From positions 622,122 through 686,121 of the forward strand of contig JAWQFM010000012.1 in NCBI GenBank assembly GCA_033442325.1: 64,000 bases of DNA, given 5' to 3'. The DNA comes from Salpingoeca rosetta (lineage: Eukaryota; Protista; Choanoflagellata). A program made the position numbers and the translations under genes. Of the stretch, positions 45,188-61,000 are shown one piece after another. The notes below the pieces were generated by a model. It did not search any database. It saw only the letters and a program-made list of their open reading frames with translations, and was not told the DNA's origin. Positions within the stretch are counted from its first letter, which is position 1. Each line of letters begins with the position of its first letter.

Positions 45188-47070
45188 TCAATTTGCAGCG
45201 TCTTCGTCGTGCCATGCCTGCTGCTGCGTGAGTGACTTGAAGCGTTCAGCCATCCCTGACGGGTTGGGAGAGTGGGAGAGGTTGGAGGAGAAGGATGAGA
45301 GAAGAGGTGAGGGAGGCATGGGGGCACTGGGGTTGACGCGAAAGACAATCCACCCTCTTCCAACCCTAAACCACACACATGCAAACACACAAGCTAACAA
45401 CACCACGCAAGCACGTACGAACATTCAAACTGCCCTCCCTGCCGCACGTGCATACACGCACCTTGGTGGACTTTGACAATGTCGAGAAAGTCGTTGCGGT
45501 GGATGACGAGAACCTGCACAGTGGTGGCCGCTCGCAGCTCTTCTGTGGACGGCGCGTTCACCAGGAAGCTGTCAAACCCAAGCGCAGCAGCACCACGGTG
45601 CACGGAGAGAAGGGTGCCGTGCCGGTCGAGTGCATGCACGCAGCCGCTGTGCACGAGGAAGAGCTGTGTGCTCTGGTCACCAACGCCGATGAGAGAATCG
45701 CCAGGAAGAAAGAACTGCGGCCGGTACTTGCGGCAGAGCGCAGGCAGGAAGCCCGCGTCGGTGTCCTGAAAGAACGGGAGCTGTGCAGCGCAACGTAGGG
45801 TGGGGTGATGATGGTGAGGGGGTGTACGACAGTGTGGTGAGGGGAAGAAGTGTGCAATGAAAAACACAAGCAAGACGGAACAAACGACGTAACACACACA
45901 CACACATGCACACACACACATGCACACACACATGCACACACACACATGCACACACACACATGCACACACACACACATGCACACATGCACGCACACATGCA
46001 CACATGCACACACACATGCACACCCGCACACGTGCACACACACAACACACGTGCACACACACATGCACACGCACCTGCTGTAGGATGGGCTGGCAGATGA
46101 TGAGAGCAACCTCCGTTTGCATTGTTGTCGGCAGATCCTCCATCAAGTGCGTAGTGTCGGTGGGAAGACCGCGGCGCCAACGCGCCTCAAAATGCTCCAG
46201 GCAGTGGGCAAGTGGACCCAACACGCCACGCAACTTGAGTGTTTCACGAACGGTCATCAACCGCTCCCGGCTCTGCACACGTTGGTAGTCTGCATTGGCC
46301 AGCGTGGAGGTGATGTTACCTGCAGTGGTGGTGGTGATGGCGGTGGGGGTGGTGGTGGTGGTTGGAATGTTATGTCGGCGCGTGTGCAATGTGTGCAGCG
46401 ATCACAGGGATGACAGTTCGGCCAACGAACGGGTGACTGCATTGCACTCCAGCTGTACATCCACATATAAACACACATTTGCAGCACTCACCGAGCACGA
46501 ATGCAAACAGGAGTTTGCCTGCAAGCATGAACAGCACCGCCGTGAGCTTCTCTGCGGTCGTGTGCGCGTGCAGATCGCCGTAGCCGGTGGTGGTGAAGGT
46601 GGCCATCGTCCAATACACGCTGTTGGTGTACACGGAGAACTGCAGCAGCCACACCAGGCAAGACGATACAAAAGTCACAGAGCGGCATGCACACGCACGC
46701 ACACACGCACGCATACACACACGCGCACACATATTTGCACACAAATATGGTTCACCGAAATGAACGTGCATGTGAGTGAAACGCCGTGGAACGTGACCGC
46801 AAACGCCGTCGTCGACTGAGATACCATCCCGCATTGACACAGCAAGAGACACCACTGGCACCATGTCCATGCAAGCTGCGTTGCACGTCACTCACGCGAG
46901 AGAGGCTGGTTGCGTGCGGGAGCCAGGAGGAGGATGAGCATGTCACGTCGGGCCCGCACGTTGCAAGATGCCACGTACACGACATGAGATGAACTGCCAG
47001 CGCAATGTACGCCGTGAACTTGATCACACGCAGCACCAGCACAGACGCATCTGCAGTGTGGTGGGTGGGC

Positions 47071-48558: not shown

Positions 48559-49688
48559 TGCACATGCACATACACGTACACGTACACACACACACAAACA
48601 AACAACTTGAGTTATCAAAAGTACTGCGCAACGTGCGTTGGTGGGGTGTTGGCGATGGCGGCTGCTGCGAGCACCGCTTGCTTCAGTGCGCGCGTGATCC
48701 GATATGCGAAACGCGACCGTGGGTGAGCACATCGTGTCCGGGCCGTCTCCTCCAACAGCAGCACAGGGTCCGCGTGATGCATTGGCAGCTGTCCACTTAC
48801 AAGACCAACACCGCCATTGTTACCACTGTTGCTGTTGTTGATCGCGTGTGCACTCTCGTCTTCGCTGCTGAGCCCGGACGAGGACCACACCGACTCCAGG
48901 GACGGGTGGCGGACAATCACGCGGTTGGGCCGCGTCACGCTTCGAGGTGACGATGGTGGCTGCAGCTGCTGTAGTCGGGATGGTGGGTTGTGCTGCGGCT
49001 GCAGCTGCTGTTGATGTTGTAGTTGCTGTTGATGTTGTAGTTGCTGTTGGTGCTGCGGGTGTTGAGCAGGGGATGACGGTTGGTGAGTGGAAGGGCGGGC
49101 TGAGGCTGTTGTTGATGCTGATACTTGTGTGTTGGTGCCTGAAGCTGTTGTCTCGTTCGAGTCAGCACTGGCACGTGCTGCATTGCTCTTGCCGCTGTCA
49201 CTGCTAGCTTTGCTACCTCGCTTCTCCTGCACCGCGCGAATGCGAGTGAGTTCCACCAGTCGTCAGCTTGTAGCCTCTCACTACAGCTTTTGCAACTTCA
49301 AGGCCCACGGTCACTGCTGGAACACACACACACACACACACGCACAAGCACACGCACACCCACTGTCTGCACACGCACGCACACTCAACACACGCTCAAC
49401 CTACCTGTTCTTCGCGGCGTTTCTTGACGAGGTTGAAGCGTTCGTTCGCTTCCTCCTTCACCTGCGCGGCAATGTCTGGGAAGATCTGCAACACACAACG
49501 GGATTTGCGTGTGTTATGCATGTGTGTGCGTGCGTGCGTGCGTGCGTGTGTACAGTATGAAGGTGAAAACACAAGTTGGCAAACCACCACCCTTACTCGC
49601 AACGTACCAATAAGCCTTGAGATGCAACAAGCATGTTTGAATCACTATTCAGTGAAAAGCACACGAGGATACGTGTTACAGCGCTGTT

Positions 49689-49726
<38 letters not shown>

Positions 49727-52700
49727 TCAGAACGTCATCAAAGTCCTGCCTGCTCAACACGAAGAGGTCACAGTCCGTCTGTGTGCGAATGGACGCTGTT
49801 CGCGGGCACGAAAACACGAGCGCAATTTCCCCTTGTTGTTGATGGCGTTGTTGTTGAGTGAGTCAGGAAGTACGTGCGTGCGTTTGTGTGTGGGTGTGCA
49901 CGACACGCTGAAGCAAACAAGCAAACGAACAGATTGCCAGCCGAGCATAGCCTCTCTGAACTCGGCTTCGCAAAGGATGTATTCTTACCAAAGAACTCTC
50001 CGCCGTGCATGGAGGCAAACACTTTTGTGCCGTCTTCAGACACCACATCCACAGTTCCGCGGTGAATGAAATACATTTCGTCTCCAGGATCGCCCTGAGG
50101 GTATGTTGGTCCAACACCATCAGTGCAATAGTGTGAAAGGGTGTGGAAGGTGGAGGTGACGCCGTGGATGACACATGAAAGGGGGCAACGTGCATCGATG
50201 AGTGACGCTTGCGGTGCAAATACATACGCAATACAGGCACATGCCTCACACAGCGTGCACGCAACCACACACACGCACACACCTTGCGGACGATGTACTC
50301 GTGCTGTGCAAGCAGAAGCGGCTGCATGTGCTGCGATAGCATTCGCTTGAAGCCTTTGCTCTTGTTGGCAAACAATGGCACGCTCTCAATAGCATCCCTG
50401 TTGCGCGCAATGAAACGCATGTGAGCGATGCAACACTGCAAATCACAGATGCCTGTGTGTGTGTGTGTGTGTGTGTGTTTATGTGTGGGTGTTTATCGGT
50501 GTGTGTGTTTATCGGTGTGTGTGTGTGTGCCTGTGTGTGCACGCGCGCGTGTGTGTGTGTGCCTGTGCATGTGTGTGTGTGTGTGTTGAAAGCTACGACA
50601 ACTTGTGGGGGGTCTTGCGAGTGTCAGATGTGCTTAAGAGGACCATCGCGATACAGGTCGGTCATGTGAAACACGGTGCTTACCGGTACACCTCAAACGC
50701 AATTTGTGATTTGAGATTCATCGGAAGGTTTCCAAAGAGGCTATTGACATTCATGCCCCTAGTGTATGTCGGTGTGGCAAAATCAGGGCGATAGCGTGGA
50801 TGGGTACGTGCATGAGATCAGCATTGCACAAAACACGACGTGCAAATGCCCCCGTTTCACAATCACACAAACACAAACACACACGCGCAAACGCGCATGC
50901 AAACAGAGCGTCCACAAATACACGCATGGTGAACTGACTCACTTGTTCCTCTTCCACAGGTATTCGTAGTATTTCAGGATGCGCGAGAGAACAGAACGGT
51001 TCACGTCAAACTGGAGCAGCAGATTCCGTATGAACACCATCTGCATGTTGCACCATTGCGTGTGCGTGTGTGTGTGTGTGTATGTGTGCGTGCGTGTGTG
51101 TGTATGTGTGCGTGTGTGTATATGTGTGTGTGGTGGTTAGTGAGTGCTGTAGAGAAAGCCTGTGAGCGCAAAGTTCAGACAACGAAGCCCAACACAGTGT
51201 CAATGATGGTGGCGTGTGTTGCTGCTCACCTTCTCCCTGTATCGCGTCTTGAGAAAGTCTGCGTTTGCCAGCAGCGCAGCAATGCTCGCCACCATGTACC
51301 CAGACAACACCGTCCCCGACATCATCATCAGCATGCTGAACGCCATTTCCCCCTGGATTGATTGAACAGTTGCGTGCATGCGTCGTTGTGCGTCCGTGAG
51401 TGGGTGAGTGCATGTGAAGGAGCGTACTTGCCTGCATGTGCACTGTGCACGAAAAGCAGGTGCTTGCATGTTCACATGGGCACAATCATACCAGCGTTCA
51501 CATTACACATAGTTCAGTGCCCATCAATGCAGGGTGCACAACGTACGGTGGTGCTCGCGTGGACATCGCCGTAGCCAACCGACGTGAGCGTGGCGGCTGC
51601 CCAGTACAGGCTCGTCGCATATGCGTCCGTGATGGAGTGGTTGCTGTTGTGCAGAAGGGCATGGGACGTGTGATGCACACAGCAATGAGAAAATACTCAC
51701 CCTGGTGGAGATGCGTTGCAGGCTGGCACAAATCACACAAGTGAACACACAAGTGAACACACAAGTGAACACCCAAGCATGCGCAAACACATTTACACGC
51801 ACACAAGCGAGCACACACAACACAGCACATAAAAAGTGTTGCATGCTGTATATTTGTACAAGAGCGATGCAAACCTGCTGAAATGGCCCCGCGCCCAGGA
51901 TTGCGGCGAACAGCCCGTGTCAAAGCACCCAATGAGATACCAACTGCACGCCACAACGTGCAGCGCCAAGAGCGCCAGACACATGAACTTGAACTTGCGA
52001 ACGGCTCCGACATCGATGGCGATGTTGCTCTCGCGCTTTCCGAAGAACAACATGACCTGGTGATGATGATGATGATGATGATGATAATGACGATGATGAT
52101 GATGATGGTGATGGTGATGGTGGTGGTGGCGAGGATGCACGCGAAAAATGATTGGGTTTGGCGCGTGAGAACGTGGTCAGAACGCTTCGTAAACAAGGGC
52201 GAACGTGTGAGGAGGAGGTTCAAGAGAGGTCGAGACACGGGCGCATGCACACGAACGCGAGCACGCGAGCACACGAACAAAGATGAACAGACACATACTA
52301 CGCGCGCCACCATGTCGGGGACATTCACGTCAATCCATCCAGCGTCACAGCACATTCACACACATACACACACACACACAACCTTGCTCCCACCACATGA
52401 CTCACGCGGGCGAGGCGGAAGCAGCGATTGAGCCGCAGAAGGCAGAACACGGTGCTGGGAAAGGCAAAGGTGGCGAGACTGACAGTCTCCAAGGGGCACA
52501 TACACACGGCATCCAACAACGCATATTGCCTAGTGGATCATATGACGGATGAAGTACCCGTTCGTCAGCATTTTTGCACAGCATCGCCCACACATGCGCA
52601 CGGCGTGACATACCGTCACCATCATCCTTTCGAGCATCCACTCATTTGCTCATTGTCACAGACACACACACACACACATGCACACACCCGTGCACGCGTA

Positions 52701-53146
52701 GCATCGCAGGCAGGTGCTGTTGGAACGCACTTTAAGTAGTTGCGAAGCGTGCAAGCGGGATCGGAAACGACGATGCCATTGCTCGTGTAGAAGGCTGAAG
52801 CACCCGCATCATATCCACATTGGAAATACAATGTGAGCATGCGTGTAGCGAACAGGCGCGGAAGGAGAGAGAGTGTGTGTAAGAGAGTTGTGTGTGTATG
52901 AGAGAGTGTGAGTGTGTGTGTGTATGAGAGAGAGAGTGAGTGTGTATGTGTGCAAGCTACACAACGAATGACTCACATGCACGCAAATACAAACAATATC
53001 ACGAAGCACAATCCGTCTTCGCTCGTTGCTGATCGTGCTGCATTGTTCAGTGCTCACTCACTCACTCACACACTCTCTCACACAAACACACACACACATT
53101 CACACACGTTCACTCACATTCACTCACATACTCTCTCTCACCCACC

Positions 53147-53179
<33 letters not shown>

Positions 53180-55017
53180 TGACTCACCCACTCTCTCTCA
53201 CCCACACACACCCACACACACACACTCTCTCTCGCTCACTCACCCAAGTGCATGCGCAGGTACGCATCCACAGCGTGAATTGCCTCTGTCAGGTAGAAGG
53301 CGATGTGCAGTGCGAGCGATTGTGGCGCAAACGCGGCCTGAAAAAACAACAACGCAATCTGTACCAAGGAAACTGCTTGCACAGCCTGAAGACCAAGCAA
53401 GTCGTGACGTGGGGTATGTGTGAGAAGGCAGACTGGCTGTGTATGCGTGTGCATGTGTGCTCAAGTCATGTGCCAGCGTGCATGTGCACTCGCATCGATA
53501 CGCTGCGTTCATCTCACGCACCCACGCATCTTGCACACACGCTTCACCCTGTGTGCGAACAGTATCTTACAAAGTCCCATCGCTGCATGGCTGCGCTGCT
53601 TGGGCGAATAGCTGTTCGCATCATCAACAGCGGACGCCTGGCTGGTGATGATGTTGACGATGTTGATGATGTTGATGATGATGATGATGTTGTTGTTGTT
53701 GTTGTCGTCGTTGTTGTTGTTGTTGTACAGGAGGTTGGTGTCTTTGCATCATCGCCGTCACCTTCAATTACACTCGTGTTTGCCGCTGCTGATGGTTTGG
53801 CGGACATCTCTTCGTCTCGCTCAAGGCTAGCTCTTCCTTCCGACTGCCGCTGCTGCTGTTGTTGTTGTTGTTGTGGGTGTTGTTGTTGTTGTGGGTGTTT
53901 TTGACCTGTCTCATGTCTTTGTGGGCTTGCTGCGTGTGCTTCTGCTGCCGATGATGACTGCGCGTCACGATCGCTGCTGCTGCTGGCTGCGCTCTCGTTC
54001 ACTGCGCGCTGAATGTCGTTTAGGAGCGCCTTGCACTGCACAAGTGACTTGACCTGAGGAAAAAAGTGAAGGTTGCGAACCGGCATGAGCAAGCACGCAT
54101 GTACGTGTCCATATGTTTCATACATCCAACACACGCTCACACACTCACACGCACTCTCTCCTCACACACACTCTCTCTCTCAACGCCTCCCCCACCTGCT
54201 TGTGGAAGCCGCGGTTCTTGCGGAACATGGCCTGAATGTCCGTCCAGGCGAGCATGTACGCGTCCACGTGTGTTACGGCGACAACGGTGGCCAGGCGGGG
54301 ACAGGCAAATAGCATTCCGTTCTCGCCAACATATGAACCACTCGACAGGCGGTGGACAACAGCACCAGAAGAGTTCAAGACCTAGCCATTCGCATGATGA
54401 TGTCAGTTGTGTGTTGCAAAGGCAGCAGGGGCAGTGTGGACAGCACAAGCATTAGAAATGCGGACACTTCACTGTGCACGACACATCCAACATTGCAGCG
54501 TCACAAATCGCTCACCTCCACTGTCCCGCGCTGAATAAAATACATTTCCCTGCCCATGTCGCCCGCACGAATGATGGTCTGGCCAGGCAGGAACAGCTGG
54601 GGATGCAACGAATTGCACGCGATTGTCAACAGCTGTGGCCCGAGCATGGAGAAGAGCGGGTACGTCTCAATCAGTCCGCCAGCAATGTCCAGTCGTCTGG
54701 CATCACGCGCAGTTGTGTGCACGTGTGAACAGTGTGAGTTGGGGTGCATGTGTATACAATGTGAGTGGGGGTGCGAATGCACATACGTGATTGCATTTTG
54801 GAACAGTGCATTCAGCAGACACAAGACAGCGGCAGCAGTTACAACACTCGGTCGCGCAAACGCATGAGCAGCGTCCGCGTACAGCTCGTGGCCAAGCGAG
54901 TCTGGCACGACATTCAACAAGTCCCACGCGCTGAGGCCCTTGTCCTTTCGCCACCTGACGACAGTGCAGAGTACATTGTTATCGCATGAAACAACGGTGC
55001 AGGTACACACGTAACCA

Positions 55018-55097
<80 letters not shown>

Positions 55098-58000
55098 GCA
55101 TTCACAAAATTGCGCGCGTGCAAGCACGAGGACACTTGCCCCCCCCCTTCCCCCAACCTGCACGTCATGTAGTCCTTGACGGCAGAGCGAACAGCGGCAG
55201 AGACGTCGTGCTCGTCCATGTATCGCTGCATTGCATCCATGCGCTCGCGGTGCTGCACTTGCATCGAGTCAGCATTTGCCTGGCGGGGAGGGGGAGGGTG
55301 ACGCATGTAATGCACAAACATATAAACGCGTGCGTACGTGTGTGAATGAGTGGATGAGGGAGTGAGTGAGTGAGTGAGTGAGTGAGTGAGTTAGCAGTGA
55401 GTGAGTGTACGTGCATGTCGTCGCATGTGTATGCCCGCAATGTGCATTCTGTTGAGAAACGCTTGCAAGAAACAGGTTGTGGTGATGAACAATGTGTGAA
55501 CACCACCACGACGTCTGCGGCACCTTGATGGCGGCGACAAAGGCGAGGACAACACCAAAGCACAGCTGTCCCAGGATCATGACAATGGCCGAGAAGACGC
55601 GTTCGCCGGCAGAGAATGGGCGAATGTCGCCGTAACCCGTCGATGTCATTGTCGCAATCGCCCTGCCAGGTAGGGCGTAGTGTGGTGTGGTGTGGTGTGG
55701 GATGCATGTCAGTCTTCTTTGCTAATGGTCAGCAAAGGCTTGCCCTTGAAAACGGTATCCAAACACAAACGCAAGAGCACTTGCTTGTCGTACCAGTACA
55801 TGCAGGCAATGTAGGCGCTAAAGGGCTCTGCTGTGGTCATGTTGCTTGCGCGCAACCAATTATATCCGCCGATGGCAATTGCGCTCCATCCACACGCACA
55901 CGTGTGCACCACAAACTACAGCAGCATACACAACGAAACAGCGTCACAAATTCAGATGGCACACTTTGCAACGAGTGAAACACAGTGAACAGCTCCCATG
56001 AATACAATACACACACATGAACACATGTACAGACGCAAACACGCACATGAAGACGCAAACGCACACACGCATCAACACACAAAACAAACCCGTCAAACGC
56101 ACACACACACACACACCACCACCACCACCACCACACGCACATCAACACAGACAACTCCCCCCCCCCGCCACCACGACACAGGCAGACACACTTCGCATAC
56201 GCGCGCGGCGGGACTTACGAAGGTGAGGCCAGCAAGCTTGAGGGCGGGCAGGGTGTGGTTTCGCTGGAAGGATTCGGCCTCCAAGCGGGAGAGCAGTGAC
56301 CAGGCCGTGTGCAGACGAAGAAGACGATTGAGGCGAACAGCAGCAACCACAGGCATCGGCAGGAACACACACCAGCACAGCAGGTCCCACGGTGCAAGGA
56401 GGATGGCTGGTATCCAGGCGTGGAGAAACGACGCCATGATTGCCGCAACGCGCGGTGCTGATGGTGCTGATGATGACGGTGACGTGCGTGCTGGTGTTTC
56501 GATTCCATGCTGCTGCTGTTGTTGCTGCTGGTGGTGGTGAACAGGGGTCGTGCAACCCATTGCACCTGAGGAAACAGCTATCGTCGTGTCTGCCACTGCT
56601 GGTGCTGGTGGTGGTGGCGCTGATGATGATGATGATGGTGATGATGACGGTGCTGTGTGCGACTGCAAGAGTGTCACCGGATAGCCGCCAGTGCGAATGG
56701 CGACGACAATTCCTTTGATCTCGCGCAGCAGCAGCGGCGCTTCCAGCGCATACGTAATGATCCACAGCGGAAGACTTGCGGGGGCAAAGGCCGCGTGATA
56801 CAGCAGCAGGACGGAGTGAACTGCAATTATGATGACATCGCGCACGTACGCGTGTCGTGCACCTGCACCCGCACTCGCACCTGAGAGGGGCGCTGCGGTC
56901 GACGCTGTCGCTGTGGTGGTTGTCGACTTTGTTGAACACAATGAGAAGAGCGGAGATAGGAGACACCACAGACACGACTGCATCCAGCCACCGCGGCGGA
57001 TATGCTGTGAACCGTTGAGAGACGAAGAAGCAAGAGATCCTCGTGTCCACCCATTGTGAATGCGTGCCCGCGTCACCCGCTCGTCATCACCACCATGAAC
57101 ACCGTCACCATCACGATCAACACCAGCGTTGCCAGCAGCAGTGTGCTGCTGCTTCTGACTGTTGCTGCCGTTGTTACTGTCGCCGTGGTGATGGCTGGCA
57201 CTCGGGTCATTCGCGACGCTTTCACTTGAGGGCGAGCCCAGCACCAGCGACAGTTCCGGAATGTTGGGCGGAGGTGGTGGCGATGGCGGTGAGGTGTCCG
57301 TGTTGCTGTTGCTGCTGCGGCTGTTGCCGTGTAGGTTGTGTGTGGCGTGGGTCGTTGTGGTCGTGATATCATCCCTACCACGACCTGTGGCGATTGAAGT
57401 CGGCTGTTGCCATGCAGCTGCGGTTGCTTGGCGAGTCAAGGTGTGTCCTGCGTTGACGCTGTTGTTCTTGCTGCCGACGCGTGAAGTTGTCGCTGCTGCG
57501 TATGCCGCCGCCTCCCGCGCGTGATCTCGAACGGACGATTCCGCCTGCGCGTCCGCCAATCGCGACTTTGCGTTCGCCATCAGCCGCGCCATCAGCACCG
57601 GATACGGTTGCAGCGCCTGCAGTGCGTTTGTGTGTGTGTGTGCGAGAGAGAGTGTGTGTGTGTGCGTGTGTGCGTGTGTGTGCGTGTGTGTGCGTGCGAG
57701 TGTGTGTGTGTATTTGCAAGCGTGTGTGCACGTGCGTGTGTGGATGTGCGAGAGAGAGAGAGTGTGTGTGCGTGTGTGCGTGTGTGTGCGTGTGTGTGCG
57801 TGCGAGTGTGTGTGTGTATTTGCAAGCGTGTGTGCACGTGCGTGTGTGGATGTTTGTGCAAAACGCAAACAAGCAAGCCACGTGTCCACAGCTCGCACAT
57901 TCACGTCGTCATGCACCAAGCAATGGCATCCATTCACCATAACATATACACACACGCGCAAACACACACACACACACAATGCCATCTCGATGCCCCCCAC

Positions 58001-61000
58001 CACCTCACCTTCTTGAGCTTCTCCTGCGTGAGCACATAGAGATCGCACGGTGCCACAGCGACAATGTCAACACTCGACCGCAACGCTGCCAATATGTGCG
58101 CGAGAGAAAATGAATGGGTGAAGAGCGGTGAGAGAAGAAGGCGTTGTCACAAACGAAATCGTGCTGCTGAGCATGTGTTGACTGCCAGAGAGAGAGAGAG
58201 AGAGAGCGCGCCGTCATGAAAGACGCGAGACTGTGCTGGCATTCTCACTGTCGCACGTTTTGGAATGTAATTGTGCGTGTCTGTGTGTGCGCGTGTGCGC
58301 GCGCGTGTGTGTGTGCAGAGGGTTAATGGACGTATTACCAAGCAAGACGCCGGCTTCACCAAACGCGTCACCGGTGGAGAGAACCGCCTGCACAGCGCCC
58401 GTTTGACCTGACACACACATACGCACATACATTCACACATACGCACACGCACGTACACACAAACACATTCACACACGCACATACGCACGACATGCAATGA
58501 GATCATCAGCAAGATCACAAATCACAATCACAATCGCACGCACCACCAACAACAATCCAATCACCACTGCAGCCATGATCACCACCTCACCTCGCACGTG
58601 CAGCTGCCCGCTCTGGATGAGGAAGACGGCTGGCACGGTCTGCCCGCGCCTGAGGACGTATTCGTTTGGGAGAAAGAGCATTGGTGCCGCCTCCATGGCG
58701 ATGCAGCGCACAATCGCAGGATCAAGATCCTTGAAGCTGTGCGTGTTTGTGTGTGTTTGTGTGTGTTTGTGTGTGTTTGTGTGTGTGTTTGTGTGTGTGT
58801 GTGTGTTTGTGTGTTTTTGTGTGTTGCGTGATGTGTTGTGTTGTGTTGCGTGTGTGTGTGACGTGTGGTGGCAAGGACGAGACGTGTGCATGACAAGTGA
58901 GTGGGTGAGAACGGGCATAATGTTCGCTTTCATTCACGATAGATGTACATCTGCAAGTCGAGGTGTTCCCACCTTGGCAGTCGCAACATGGCATCCTTCA
59001 GCGTTGTTTCGGCCACCTGAACCAGAGCAGGAACGAAGTGGCATGAGCGAACAGAACGTGCAGTCTACAAAGAAGACACATTGAAAAGCGACACAAGCGC
59101 ACAACACAAGAGCACACACACACACACACACAATACACACACACAAACAATACACACAAGCAACACAGGCACACACACAAGCAACACACACACACAAGCA
59201 ACACACGTGCACACACACATGCACACCTGGGCCTGGATACTGAGGGGCAGATCGGAGAACGAGACGGCCTGTGTGCGGCCGCCCTTGAAGCGCCAGAGAT
59301 ACTGCAAGTACGAGACCACGCGATGCTGCAGCTGCGGTTTCACGCGCTCCGCTTGCATCAGGTCGGTGATTGCCTGCACACGTGTCGAAGGCAGTGCACA
59401 CAGGGTTTGCGTTCGAGCGTGTGTGTGTGTGTGTGTGCGTGTTATTATTGTGTGTGTGTGAGTGTGAGTGTGAGTGTGAGTGTGAGTGTGAGTGTGAGTG
59501 TGAGTGTGAGTGTGTGCATCGTGGTGGTGAAGCACACACGGTAGGGCATCACACAATCCTTCAGGTACAGCGAGGACAGCATACAGTGAAGCAAACCACC
59601 TCTCCCTTCGTTTCCTCCTGCCCTCGCCTTGCATGGCGACACGTCGTACCTGTGCAAGATGCTGGTATCGAACCCTGTGGGCGCCTGTGTTGCTGAACAC
59701 GGATGCAAGACCACCAAAGAGGTATCCAAATGCAACAACACCTGACACAGCGACAGCGTGGCGTGAGCCCAAGGGGTTGTGGGCATGCACACATGATGTA
59801 AGAGACATAGAGCTGTGTCCACATGCCGATGTAAGAGACATAGAGCTGTGTCCACATGCCGAGCTGCGTGCACATGCCGAGCTGCGTGCACGTGCAACCA
59901 TACTAAGCACACACACAACACACACACACACACACACAAACACACACAAATACACACACAACACACACAACACACACACACCACATGCTTGCAGACCTGT
60001 GAGCATGAGGATGATGGTGATCCATTTCTCGCCGACAAAGACGGGAAACACGTCGCCGTAACCCGTGGAGGTGGTGGTTGCCGCCACCCAATACAGCGCA
60101 AGCACGTAACTGCATGGCAACGAGGGCACGTGTGGCGTTTGATGCGGTTTGGAAGGGACGTGAGGGTGAGGCGGAAATGCGATTGTGAGGAACACTGATA
60201 GCACTCCAACGTTGGGTTGTGACGACACACAGCGCTGCCTCATGGCATGCACACACAAGCACACATGTAAACTCTCACACACACACAAACACACACACAC
60301 AAACACAAACACAAACACAAACACAAGCATAACTCGCACGCATGCACACACACAGACACACAAACACACAAACACGTACACAAACACACATTCTCTCTCT
60401 CATTCACATTCATACGCAAGCATGCACTGACTCTGATGATGAGGAGTTTGTGGCTGCGAGGTGTGCCGACCACGTCCAACCCGAGGCATCACATCCGCGC
60501 TCACCGCACCCTTTTGGGGGGCGTGGTTGTACAATGTGGTGATGGGGGCAGGGGGCGGTTGTGGTGGCGATATGGGGGAGCGAAACGAAGGTAATATGAG
60601 GCACGATGCATGATGAGGACACAAGAGGCAACGGAAGTAGAATGCGTTCATTCATATGTTTACATTGAGCAGGAGCACGTGCAAGCAAGCTGGGACACGT
60701 ACCGAAGAAGACCCATGCACACGGAACGAGATGCTGCATAGCCAGCATGAGCGCAATAAACTTGATGGCCAACATCTGTCGAGCAGCAGCAACACGGTGA
60801 GCGTTATCCTGGATGCAATTCGGGGTGAAGCTCACAATACAATCCTTCCCACGTACACGCACACAACGCAGTCTTTCATGATGCGAATACCCGCGTGCAC
60901 TCCACGCAAGCAACAAACAACACACACGCACGCACACACGCACACGCACACACACACACACGCACACACACATACACATACACGCATACACGCACACACA

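What the first reader, a model, noticed from the sequence alone, without database searches (positions are those of the whole stretch)
49725..50100. Only CNBD3 of the channel has a fully canonical phosphate-binding cassette
Seen after splicing: CNBD3 = [18 protein letters not shown] (G-E, R, and following T). CNBD2 = [18 protein letters not shown] (R kept, T lost). CNBD1 = [18 protein letters not shown] (R displaced). CNBD4 = [18 protein letters not shown] (E and R lost). Established: the Thr after the Arg favours cGMP, and in sea-urchin CNGK the third CNBD is the one required for cGMP gating. Inference: single-ligand, repeat-3 gating is ancestral and conserved beyond animals.
Basis: partly seen in the sequence, partly recalled or inferred. 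Interest (0 to 1): 0.7.

Follow-up and report, generated by a model that had tools for sequence, protein, structure and literature searches.

The report
Choanoflagellate CNGK channel: one intact cGMP site
The stretch encodes the third cyclic-nucleotide-binding domain of the already published four-repeat potassium channel SrCNGK of Salpingoeca rosetta; it is the only one of the four with a complete ligand-binding motif, which fits the sea-urchin channel but does not show that one-ligand gating is ancestral.

Summary
All four 18-residue strings are encoded on the minus strand. RNA reads confirm the splice that builds CNBD3 (F-F-G|E-I-A-L; intron 49832-49988). The CNBD1 junction is a clean GT..AG pair that keeps the canonical motif length, and no other frame near CNBD1 or CNBD4 encodes a canonical motif.

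The gene is SrCNGK, already listed by Fechner et al. 2015 (PMC4749565), and it is the only such locus in this genome.

- **For it:** in 32 four-repeat CNGKs, repeat 3 keeps G-E plus Arg in 30, against 25, 25 and 4 for repeats 1, 2 and 4. Repeat 3 is also the slowest-evolving repeat. Its motif in S. rosetta matches the sea-urchin one at 17 of 18 residues.
- **Against it:**
  - Sea-urchin relatives keep G-E..R-T in repeats 1 to 3, although only repeat 3 is reported to gate, so an intact motif does not predict function.
  - S. rosetta CNBD2 keeps Glu and Arg and may still bind.
  - The ichthyosporean Chromosphaera keeps all four motifs, so four competent sites look ancestral.

This is a modest addition to a known channel family.

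The parts
50283..50396 (-). CNBD3 first exon part (DAIESVPLF...HEYIVRK): helix A and first strands of the beta roll; donor gtgtgt follows
   Evidence: intron 50095-50282 confirmed by spliced RNA reads. tblastn gives 56-58% identity to repeat 3 of P0005 and Chromosphaera.
49989..50094 (-). CNBD3 middle exon ([35 protein letters not shown] plus first base of the Gly codon)
   Evidence: Pfam PF00027 profile positions 14-51, E=3.1e-6. Both flanking introns are confirmed by RNA reads.
49832..49988 (-). 157-nt GT..AG intron that splits the phosphate-binding cassette of CNBD3 between FF-G and E
   Evidence: Joint seen in 3 and 12 reads of two raw RNA runs and in one contig each of two other runs.
49725..49831 (-). 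CNBD3 cassette exon: (G)[35 protein letters not shown], with Glu, Arg and Thr all present
   Evidence: Pfam PF00027 profile positions 52-87, E=2.9e-7. Identity to repeat 3 is 80% for P0005, 72% for Chromosphaera and 69% for Diadema. Best solved relatives are the LliK and SthK CNBDs.
49405..49485 (-). Exon after the CNBD3 cassette ([27 protein letters not shown]), probably helix C
   Evidence: Acceptor ttgcag and donor gtaggt. RNA depth is present in 49300-49496 and zero in 49497-49693. The joint itself was not among the rows shown.
54196..54381 (-). CNBD2 cassette exon: ...[22 protein letters not shown]..., with Glu and Arg kept and Leu after the Arg
   Evidence: Introns 54382-54515 and 54054-54195 are confirmed by RNA. 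Pfam PF00027 E=2.8e-5 on the overlapping translation 54172-54345.
58340..58405 (-). CNBD1 exon ending ...[13 protein letters not shown] plus the first base of an Ala codon
   Evidence: acceptor gtgtcag, donor G|gtaata.
58006..58086 (-). CNBD1 exon (A)[26 protein letters not shown]: Arg sits one place early and Ser occupies the canonical Arg position
   Evidence: acceptor ttggcag; hmmalign places S, not R, in the Arg column. The cassette length equals the canonical one.
45472..45792 (-). CNBD4, almost whole in one open stretch; cassette [18 protein letters not shown] with Phe for Glu and Ser for Arg
   Evidence: Pfam PF00027 E=8.4e-11, profile positions 2-86. Very long branch in the CNBD tree; its only close relative is the fragment P0002 at 58% identity.
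51565..51585 (-). Repeat-3 selectivity filter TSVGYGD. The others are TSTGYGD at 60052-60072 and 55626-55646, and TTTGYGD at 46574-46594
   Evidence: all four repeats carry the K+ channel signature.

Best explanation
The stretch is the ligand-binding core of the third cyclic-nucleotide-binding domain of SrCNGK. This is the single four-repeat (pseudotetrameric) K+-selective CNBD channel of Salpingoeca rosetta.

**Shown:**
- All four repeats have a T-x-x-G-Y-G-D filter.
- CNBD3 has a complete cassette (G-E ... P-R-T-A-S) that matches the sea-urchin repeat-3 cassette at 17 of 18 residues.
- CNBD1 has Ser at the phosphate-binding Arg position.
- CNBD4 lacks both the ribose-binding Glu and the Arg.
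- CNBD2 keeps Glu and Arg but has Leu where cGMP-binding sites have Thr.

**Inferred:**
- CNBD3 is the principal high-affinity sensor that opens the pore, probably for cGMP.
- CNBD1 and CNBD4 serve as structural parts of the gating ring without canonical ligand binding.
- CNBD2 is either silent or a weaker, less cGMP-selective site.
- The asymmetry arose by decay from an ancestor with four competent sites, with repeat 3 under the strongest constraint since at least the common ancestor of choanoflagellates and animals.
For: - Motifs and splice sites.
- RNA-confirmed junctions for CNBD3 and CNBD2, and expression from the minus strand.
- Contiguous Pfam profile positions across the CNBD3 junction.
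- K+ filters.
- Only one such locus in the 55.4-Mb genome.
- Cassette survey of 32 CNGKs, counting G-E plus Arg: repeat 1 has 25, repeat 2 has 25, repeat 3 has 30, repeat 4 has 4.
- Repeat tree: the repeats are 1:1 orthologous across Chromosphaera, the unnamed clade and animals (R3 clade 98*, R4 92, R1 83), and repeat 3 has the shortest branches.
- An unnamed protist clade that is sister to animals in each repeat clade shares the S. rosetta pattern: repeat 1 has Arg only at the -1 position, repeat 2 has P-R-L, repeat 3 is intact, and repeat 4 lacks Arg.
- Role of the Thr, and a roughly 30-fold effect of replacing it: PMC3080414.
- Third-CNBD gating in ApCNGK: PMC4749565.
Against: - No functional data exist for SrCNGK.
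- An intact cassette is not sufficient. Sea-urchin relatives have G-E..R-T in repeats 1 and 2, yet only repeat 3 is reported to gate.
- Zebrafish CNGK has what its authors call canonical CNBDs but is gated by pH. Those authors state that no sequence feature explains this (PMC4749565).
- CNBD2 keeps both main contact residues, so two-site binding is not excluded.
- Thr after Arg is also found in cAMP-preferring HCN channels (my own knowledge), so the ligand is not settled.
- The CNBD1 junction was not checked with reads.
- The 32 proteins are not phylogenetically independent; seven are echinoderms.
Confidence: 0.55

Rival explanations
1. Two-site channel: CNBD2 and CNBD3 both bind ligand. CNBD2 would be a lower-affinity or cAMP-type site because Leu replaces the Thr that contacts the guanine 2-amino group, and gating integrates both sites.
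For: - CNBD2 keeps G-E and P-R at canonical spacing, and the rest of its beta roll looks normal.
- P-R-L or P-R-M in repeat 2 recurs in the unnamed clade, corals, an annelid and a nemertean. That recurrence suggests a tolerated, conserved state rather than decay.
- Replacing the Thr in PKG or CNG channels lowers cGMP sensitivity about 30-fold but does not abolish binding, and cAMP sensitivity is unchanged (PMC3080414).
Against: - In ApCNGK, where repeat 2 appears even more canonical (R-T in the urchin relatives Diadema and Lytechinus), repeat 2 is reported as non-functional (PMC4749565).
- CNBD2 has N-G where the helix of the cassette usually has [LIV]-[AS].
Confidence: 0.2
2. [quoted passage not shown] As in zebrafish CNGK, the CNBDs serve another stimulus such as intracellular pH, or act only structurally, and the intact CNBD3 cassette is kept for a non-gating reason.
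For: DrCNGK is insensitive to cAMP and cGMP and is controlled by pH. Its authors conclude that sequence does not predict this (PMC4749565).
Against: - Fish CNGKs sit on long branches with altered cassettes in repeats 2 to 4 and carry a 42-residue insert in the repeat-3 C-linker (PMC4749565).
- S. rosetta repeat 3 has no such insert according to the RNA-defined exons, and its cassette is 17 of 18 identical to the cGMP-gated urchin type.
Confidence: 0.15
3. The apparent decay of CNBD1 or CNBD4 is an artefact of a wrong gene model, and the real mRNA encodes canonical cassettes there.
For: The CNBD1 junction was not covered by the single reads call allowed (one search covered 49300-55200 only).
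Against: - No frame near CNBD1 or CNBD4 encodes a canonical cassette.
- The CNBD4 cassette is uninterrupted inside a 107-residue open stretch that matches Pfam end to end.
- The CNBD1 junction uses a clean GT..AG pair and gives exactly the canonical cassette length.
- The same Arg-at-minus-one state is found in intronless genes of the unnamed clade.
Confidence: 0.03

Closest known systems
ApCNGK / Sp-tetraKCNG, the sea-urchin sperm cGMP-gated K+ channel (Bonigk et al. 2009, as summarised in PMC4749565)
   Same: - Four 6TM-pore-CNBD repeats in one polypeptide and G-Y-G-D filters.
- Repeats are 1:1 orthologous in the repeat tree, judged from the urchin Diadema.
- The repeat-3 cassette [18 protein letters not shown] of the urchins Diadema and Lytechinus differs from S. 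rosetta at one residue (Ser for Ala).
- Repeat 4 lacks the G-E pair in both.
   Different: - Urchin repeats 1 and 2 keep G-E..R-T, and repeat 4 keeps the Arg.
- S. rosetta has lost the Arg in repeats 1 and 4 and the Thr in repeat 2.
- Overall identity is only about 40% over alignable exons.
- S. rosetta is unicellular and has no sperm. No electrophysiology exists for it.
DrCNGK, the zebrafish sperm CNGK (PMC4749565)
   Same: Same family and four-repeat plan, with unequal CNBDs.
   Different: - It is gated by pH, not by cyclic nucleotides.
- It has Ala for Arg in repeat 2 and a 42-residue insert in the repeat-3 C-linker.
Chromosphaera perkinsii (Ichthyosporea) four-repeat CNGK, P0174
   Same: An orthologous four-repeat channel from a unicellular holozoan. 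Each of its repeats groups with the matching animal repeat.
   Different: All four cassettes keep G-E..R-[ST]. It therefore shows the undecayed state that S. rosetta has lost in three repeats.
Homotetrameric CNBD channels with solved structures: LliK (5v4s), SthK (4d7s and others), HCN, MloK1
   Same: The CNBD3 cassette exon aligns to them end to end with Glu, Arg and Ser/Thr in register.
   Different: They have four identical subunits and four identical sites. No CNGK structure turned up in the two exon-level sequence searches of the PDB.

Membership tests
CNGK / tetraKCNG (four-repeat K+-selective CNBD channel) | Four tandem repeats, each with a pore and a CNBD, in one gene | tested here: met
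   Four G-Y-G-D filters at about 60.06, 55.64, 51.58 and 46.58 kb, each followed by a Pfam PF00027 match. All are on the minus strand and collinear with full-length CNGKs in tblastn. Two RNA contigs link exons across 49988-53384 and across 53905-54696.
CNGK / tetraKCNG (four-repeat K+-selective CNBD channel) | K+ selectivity signature G-[YF]-G-D in the pore loops | tested here: met
   TSTGYGD, TSTGYGD, TSVGYGD and TTTGYGD. Actual ion selectivity was not measured.
CNGK / tetraKCNG (four-repeat K+-selective CNBD channel) | Orthology to animal CNGK rather than to HCN, CNG or KCNH | tested here: met
   - Best relatives of the exons are four-repeat CNGKs of echinoderms, hemichordates, cnidarians and sponges at about 40% identity.
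- The repeat-3 cassette exon is closest to repeat 3 of those proteins.
- The published tree places SrCNGK in the family (PMC4749565).
- I built no tree with a joined S. rosetta sequence.
CNGK / tetraKCNG (four-repeat K+-selective CNBD channel) | Gating by cyclic nucleotide | not testable with these tools
   Needs electrophysiology. One family member, DrCNGK, fails this feature (PMC4749565).
Ligand-competent CNBD (canonical phosphate-binding cassette) | G-E, then Arg nine residues after the Glu, followed by Ser, Thr or Ala | tested here: met
   For CNBD3 only: [13 protein letters not shown].
Ligand-competent CNBD (canonical phosphate-binding cassette) | The same feature in CNBD1, CNBD2 and CNBD4 | tested here: not met
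   - CNBD1 has Ser at the Arg position.
- CNBD4 has Phe for Glu and Ser for Arg.
- CNBD2 has Glu and Arg but Leu after the Arg.

CNBD2 fails only the third element.

The most novel reading that the evidence does not exclude
The functional asymmetry of CNGK, with one working sensor in repeat 3, predates animals. S. rosetta and a sister protist lineage would then be natural 'minimal' versions, in which evolution has already removed the canonical Arg from repeats 1 and 4. SrCNGK would be a single-ligand, high-sensitivity cGMP-gated K+ channel acting in a unicellular cGMP pathway, for example downstream of the rhodopsin-phosphodiesterase first found in this species (PMC12004702). Chromosphaera would preserve the four-site ancestor. 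Together these would give a natural series for studying how cooperative tetrameric gating became non-cooperative.
Probability: 0.3. Interest if true: 0.6.

Novelty: already known. Interest (0 to 1): 0.35.

Why it matters
CNGK is the textbook case of a CNG-type channel opened by a single ligand molecule, which underlies near single-molecule sensitivity in sperm chemotaxis. The gene in S. rosetta is already published.

This check adds three things:
- A transcript-verified statement that three of its four binding sites lack the full canonical cassette, while repeat 3 is almost identical to the sea-urchin site.
- The finding that repeat 3 is the most constrained repeat across Holozoa.
- The finding that an ichthyosporean keeps four intact sites.

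This gives an ordered set of natural variants (four, three, or one intact cassette) for testing when and how one-site gating arose. It also suggests a cGMP-controlled K+ conductance in a choanoflagellate. It does not settle function.

Tried and rejected
- **Annotated S. rosetta protein (XP_004992545.1).** It did not appear in the representative search or the word search. The best matches to the window are about 40% identical, so I could not compare with the public gene model.
- **Bonigk 2009 and Altenhofen 1991.** Neither is held. I used the summaries in PMC4749565 and PMC3080414.
- **Placing S. rosetta in the repeat tree.** I tried with the single CNBD4 exon. It sits on a very long branch and joins only a 151-residue fragment, P0002, so the result is uninformative.
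- **Joined sequences.** There is therefore no full-length S. rosetta protein, no tree with it, and no structure prediction of CNBD1-3. All searches were exon by exon, by reference.
- **Identity of the unnamed clade.** I tried to identify it through a neighbouring CCDC39 gene. The best named hit is an acanthoecid choanoflagellate at 37%, against 33-34% for animals. This is suggestive only.
- **Wrong gene model for CNBD1 or CNBD4.** Rejected.
- **Extra RNA 'joints'.** Joints such as 50884 to 54163 lie in (CA)n repeats, carry non-intron ends, and were ignored.

Full report
**What is at the coordinates**

The window is eukaryotic DNA with short GT..AG introns rich in (CA)n. On the minus strand, 49725-50100 holds two exons of a cyclic-nucleotide-binding domain. 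Exon 49989-50094 encodes [35 protein letters not shown] plus one base. Exon 49725-49831 encodes (G)[35 protein letters not shown].

The donor is G|gtaaga and the acceptor is caacaacaag|GG, and the split codon G+GG reads Gly. Pfam PF00027 matches the two exons at profile positions 14-51 and 52-87, which are exactly contiguous.

RNA reads from two raw RNA-seq runs (3 and 12 spliced reads), plus one contig in each of two other runs, skip exactly 49832-49988. They also confirm the neighbouring introns 50095-50282, 50397-50683, 54382-54515 and 54054-54195. First mates lie almost only on the + strand at the exons, which fits a minus-strand transcript in a stranded library. The CNBD3 string is therefore real and expressed.

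**The other three strings**

- **CNBD2** (54280-54333) and **CNBD4** (45532-45585) are uninterrupted within exons.
- **CNBD1** is split. AFGEAGVLL plus G is followed by gtaata, and ttggcag precedes CG-TTG-CGG. This gives [18 protein letters not shown].
- The distance from the CNBD1 Glu to the conserved C-D-L of the next strand equals that in CNBD3. The Arg is therefore not shifted by an indel. It sits at the position usually held by Pro, and Ser holds the Arg position. hmmalign agrees.
- I could not lay reads on this junction, because only one call of 6 kb was allowed.
- A scan of all minus-strand frames around CNBD1 and CNBD4 finds no alternative segment that could supply a canonical cassette.

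**What the gene is**

Four filters (TSTGYGD, TSTGYGD, TSVGYGD, TTTGYGD) are each followed by a CNBD. Fechner et al. 2015 list a CNGK orthologue in this species, SrCNGK (XP_004992545.1), and place it in the CNGK family. A six-frame search of the whole 55.4-Mb assembly with a repeat-3 query hits only this locus. The gene itself is therefore already known.

**Relatives**

A full HMMER search with the one CNBD that lies in a single exon (CNBD4, 107 residues) returned many proteins of about 2000 residues with four matched stretches. A word search with repeat 3 of one of them added named orthologues. These come from sea urchins (Diadema, Lytechinus), starfish, sea cucumber, crinoids, hemichordates, annelid, nemerteans, cnidarians, sponges, tunicates and fish. 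Cluster look-ups also identified the ichthyosporean Chromosphaera perkinsii. None is the S. rosetta protein; identity to the window is about 40%.

**Repeat orthology and rates**

In it, repeats 1, 3 and 4 of Chromosphaera, an unnamed protist clade and animals form one clade each (support 83, 98*, 92). Repeat 2 is nearly so. Within each clade the order is Chromosphaera, then the unnamed clade, then animals. The four-repeat gene therefore predates the split of Ichthyosporea from choanoflagellates plus animals.

Mean patristic distance is 1.50 for repeat 3, against 2.22, 2.17 and 2.59 for repeats 1, 2 and 4. Stramenopile four-repeat channels fall outside these clades.

**Cassette survey**

Counts in 32 four-CNBD proteins:

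| Repeat | G-E plus Arg at the canonical place | With Ser/Thr after the Arg |
|---|---|---|
| 1 | 25 | 17 |
| 2 | 25 | 18 |
| 3 | 30 | 25 |
| 4 | 4 | 2 |

The counts are not independent; seven of the proteins are echinoderms.

The repeat-3 cassette is [18 protein letters not shown] in the sea urchins Diadema and Lytechinus and in the unnamed clade member P0005. The S. rosetta cassette differs only by Ala for Ser.

The unnamed clade has an intronless gene beside CCDC39 and NIPA genes. The best named relative of that CCDC39 is an acanthoecid choanoflagellate at 37%. This clade shares the S. rosetta pattern: repeat 1 has Arg only at the -1 position, repeat 2 has P-R-L, repeat 3 is intact, and repeat 4 lacks Arg. 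The pattern is thus a lineage feature and not an accident of one genome.

**What limits the inference**

- Diadema and Lytechinus have LFGEVSLIFSMPRTNTIR in repeat 1 and YFGEVGLIFGDYRTATVR in repeat 2. Both keep Glu, Arg and Thr. Yet the sea-urchin channel is described as opened by one cGMP at the third CNBD, with the others implied to be non-functional (PMC4749565). An intact cassette is therefore not sufficient for function.
- Zebrafish CNGK is insensitive to cyclic nucleotides, and its authors state that no sequence feature explains this.
- S. rosetta CNBD2 keeps Glu and Arg. Replacing the Thr by Ala or Val in PKG, or by Ala in the rod channel, costs about 30-fold in cGMP sensitivity and nothing for cAMP (PMC3080414). 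A Leu there predicts a weaker, less cGMP-selective site, not a dead one.
- Chromosphaera and its unnamed relative keep all four cassettes. The ancestor most likely had four competent sites, as expected for a channel built by duplicating a working subunit.
- Repeat 3 is not inviolable. It has lost Glu and Arg in an amphioxus protein and in a jellyfish, and it has Lys for Arg in a cyprinid.

**Mechanism proposed**

Shown: K+ filters, expression, one intact cassette and three altered ones, and the strongest constraint on repeat 3.

Inferred: cGMP binding at CNBD3 opens the pore. CNBD1 and CNBD4 act as ligand-free members of the ring. CNBD2 is weak or silent. The ligand is inferred from near-identity to the urchin site, not from the Thr alone. 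A cGMP pathway exists in this species, since rhodopsin-phosphodiesterase was first found in it (PMC12004702). A link to this channel is speculation.

There is therefore no full-length S. rosetta protein, no tree containing it beyond one exon, and no structure model of CNBD1-3.

**Verdict**

The gene is already known, and the per-repeat pattern with its comparative context is a modest, testable addition.

Noticed in passing
P0174 (Chromosphaera perkinsii, EukProt EP01135) and P0001 (ENA, unnamed): An ichthyosporean has a four-repeat CNGK whose repeats group one-to-one with animal repeats, and all four phosphate-binding cassettes are intact. The survey paper PMC7576140 speaks only of metazoans and choanoflagellates, so the family may be older than stated there.
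   Followed up: partly
L004:4423-10728 (Logan SRR27444502); also L003 (ENA ERZ17096198); proteins P0005, P0173, P0180, P0165: An unnamed protist clade has an intronless 6.3-kb CNGK gene, flanked by CCDC39 and NIPA genes on a compact contig. It is sister to animals in every repeat clade and shares the S. rosetta cassette pattern. The neighbouring CCDC39 is closest to an acanthoecid choanoflagellate (37%).
   Followed up: partly
P0012 (Branchiostoma floridae), P0197 (Rhopilema esculentum), P0045 (Sinocyclocheilus): In these animals the repeat-3 cassette itself has decayed: FFGYMHVMLKEPWEFTVR, FFGDVGVVCNAQVNFSIR, and P-K-A-A for P-R-T-A. Other repeats keep Glu and Arg. They are counter-examples to a universal repeat-3 sensor.
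   Followed up: no
P0214 (Hondaea), P0215 (Triparma), P0216 (Cantina): Stramenopiles have four-repeat CNBD K+ channels whose repeats cluster together outside the holozoan R1-R4 clades (99*). This suggests an independent origin of the four-repeat form or strong divergence.
   Followed up: no
window 50864-50889 and 54129-54181: (CA)n and related microsatellites in introns attract many RNA reads from elsewhere. They create false joints (for example 50884 to 54163, ends GC..CT) and apparent base differences at 50264-50265, 50870 and 54151. Depth there is not expression of this gene.
   Followed up: no
window 45472-45792 (minus strand): CNBD4 of S. rosetta is extremely diverged. Its only close match in 1.8 billion representatives is a 151-residue metagenomic fragment (P0002, 58% identity) with the same G-F start of the cassette. 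It still scores as a complete CNBD fold in Pfam (E=8.4e-11).
   Followed up: partly
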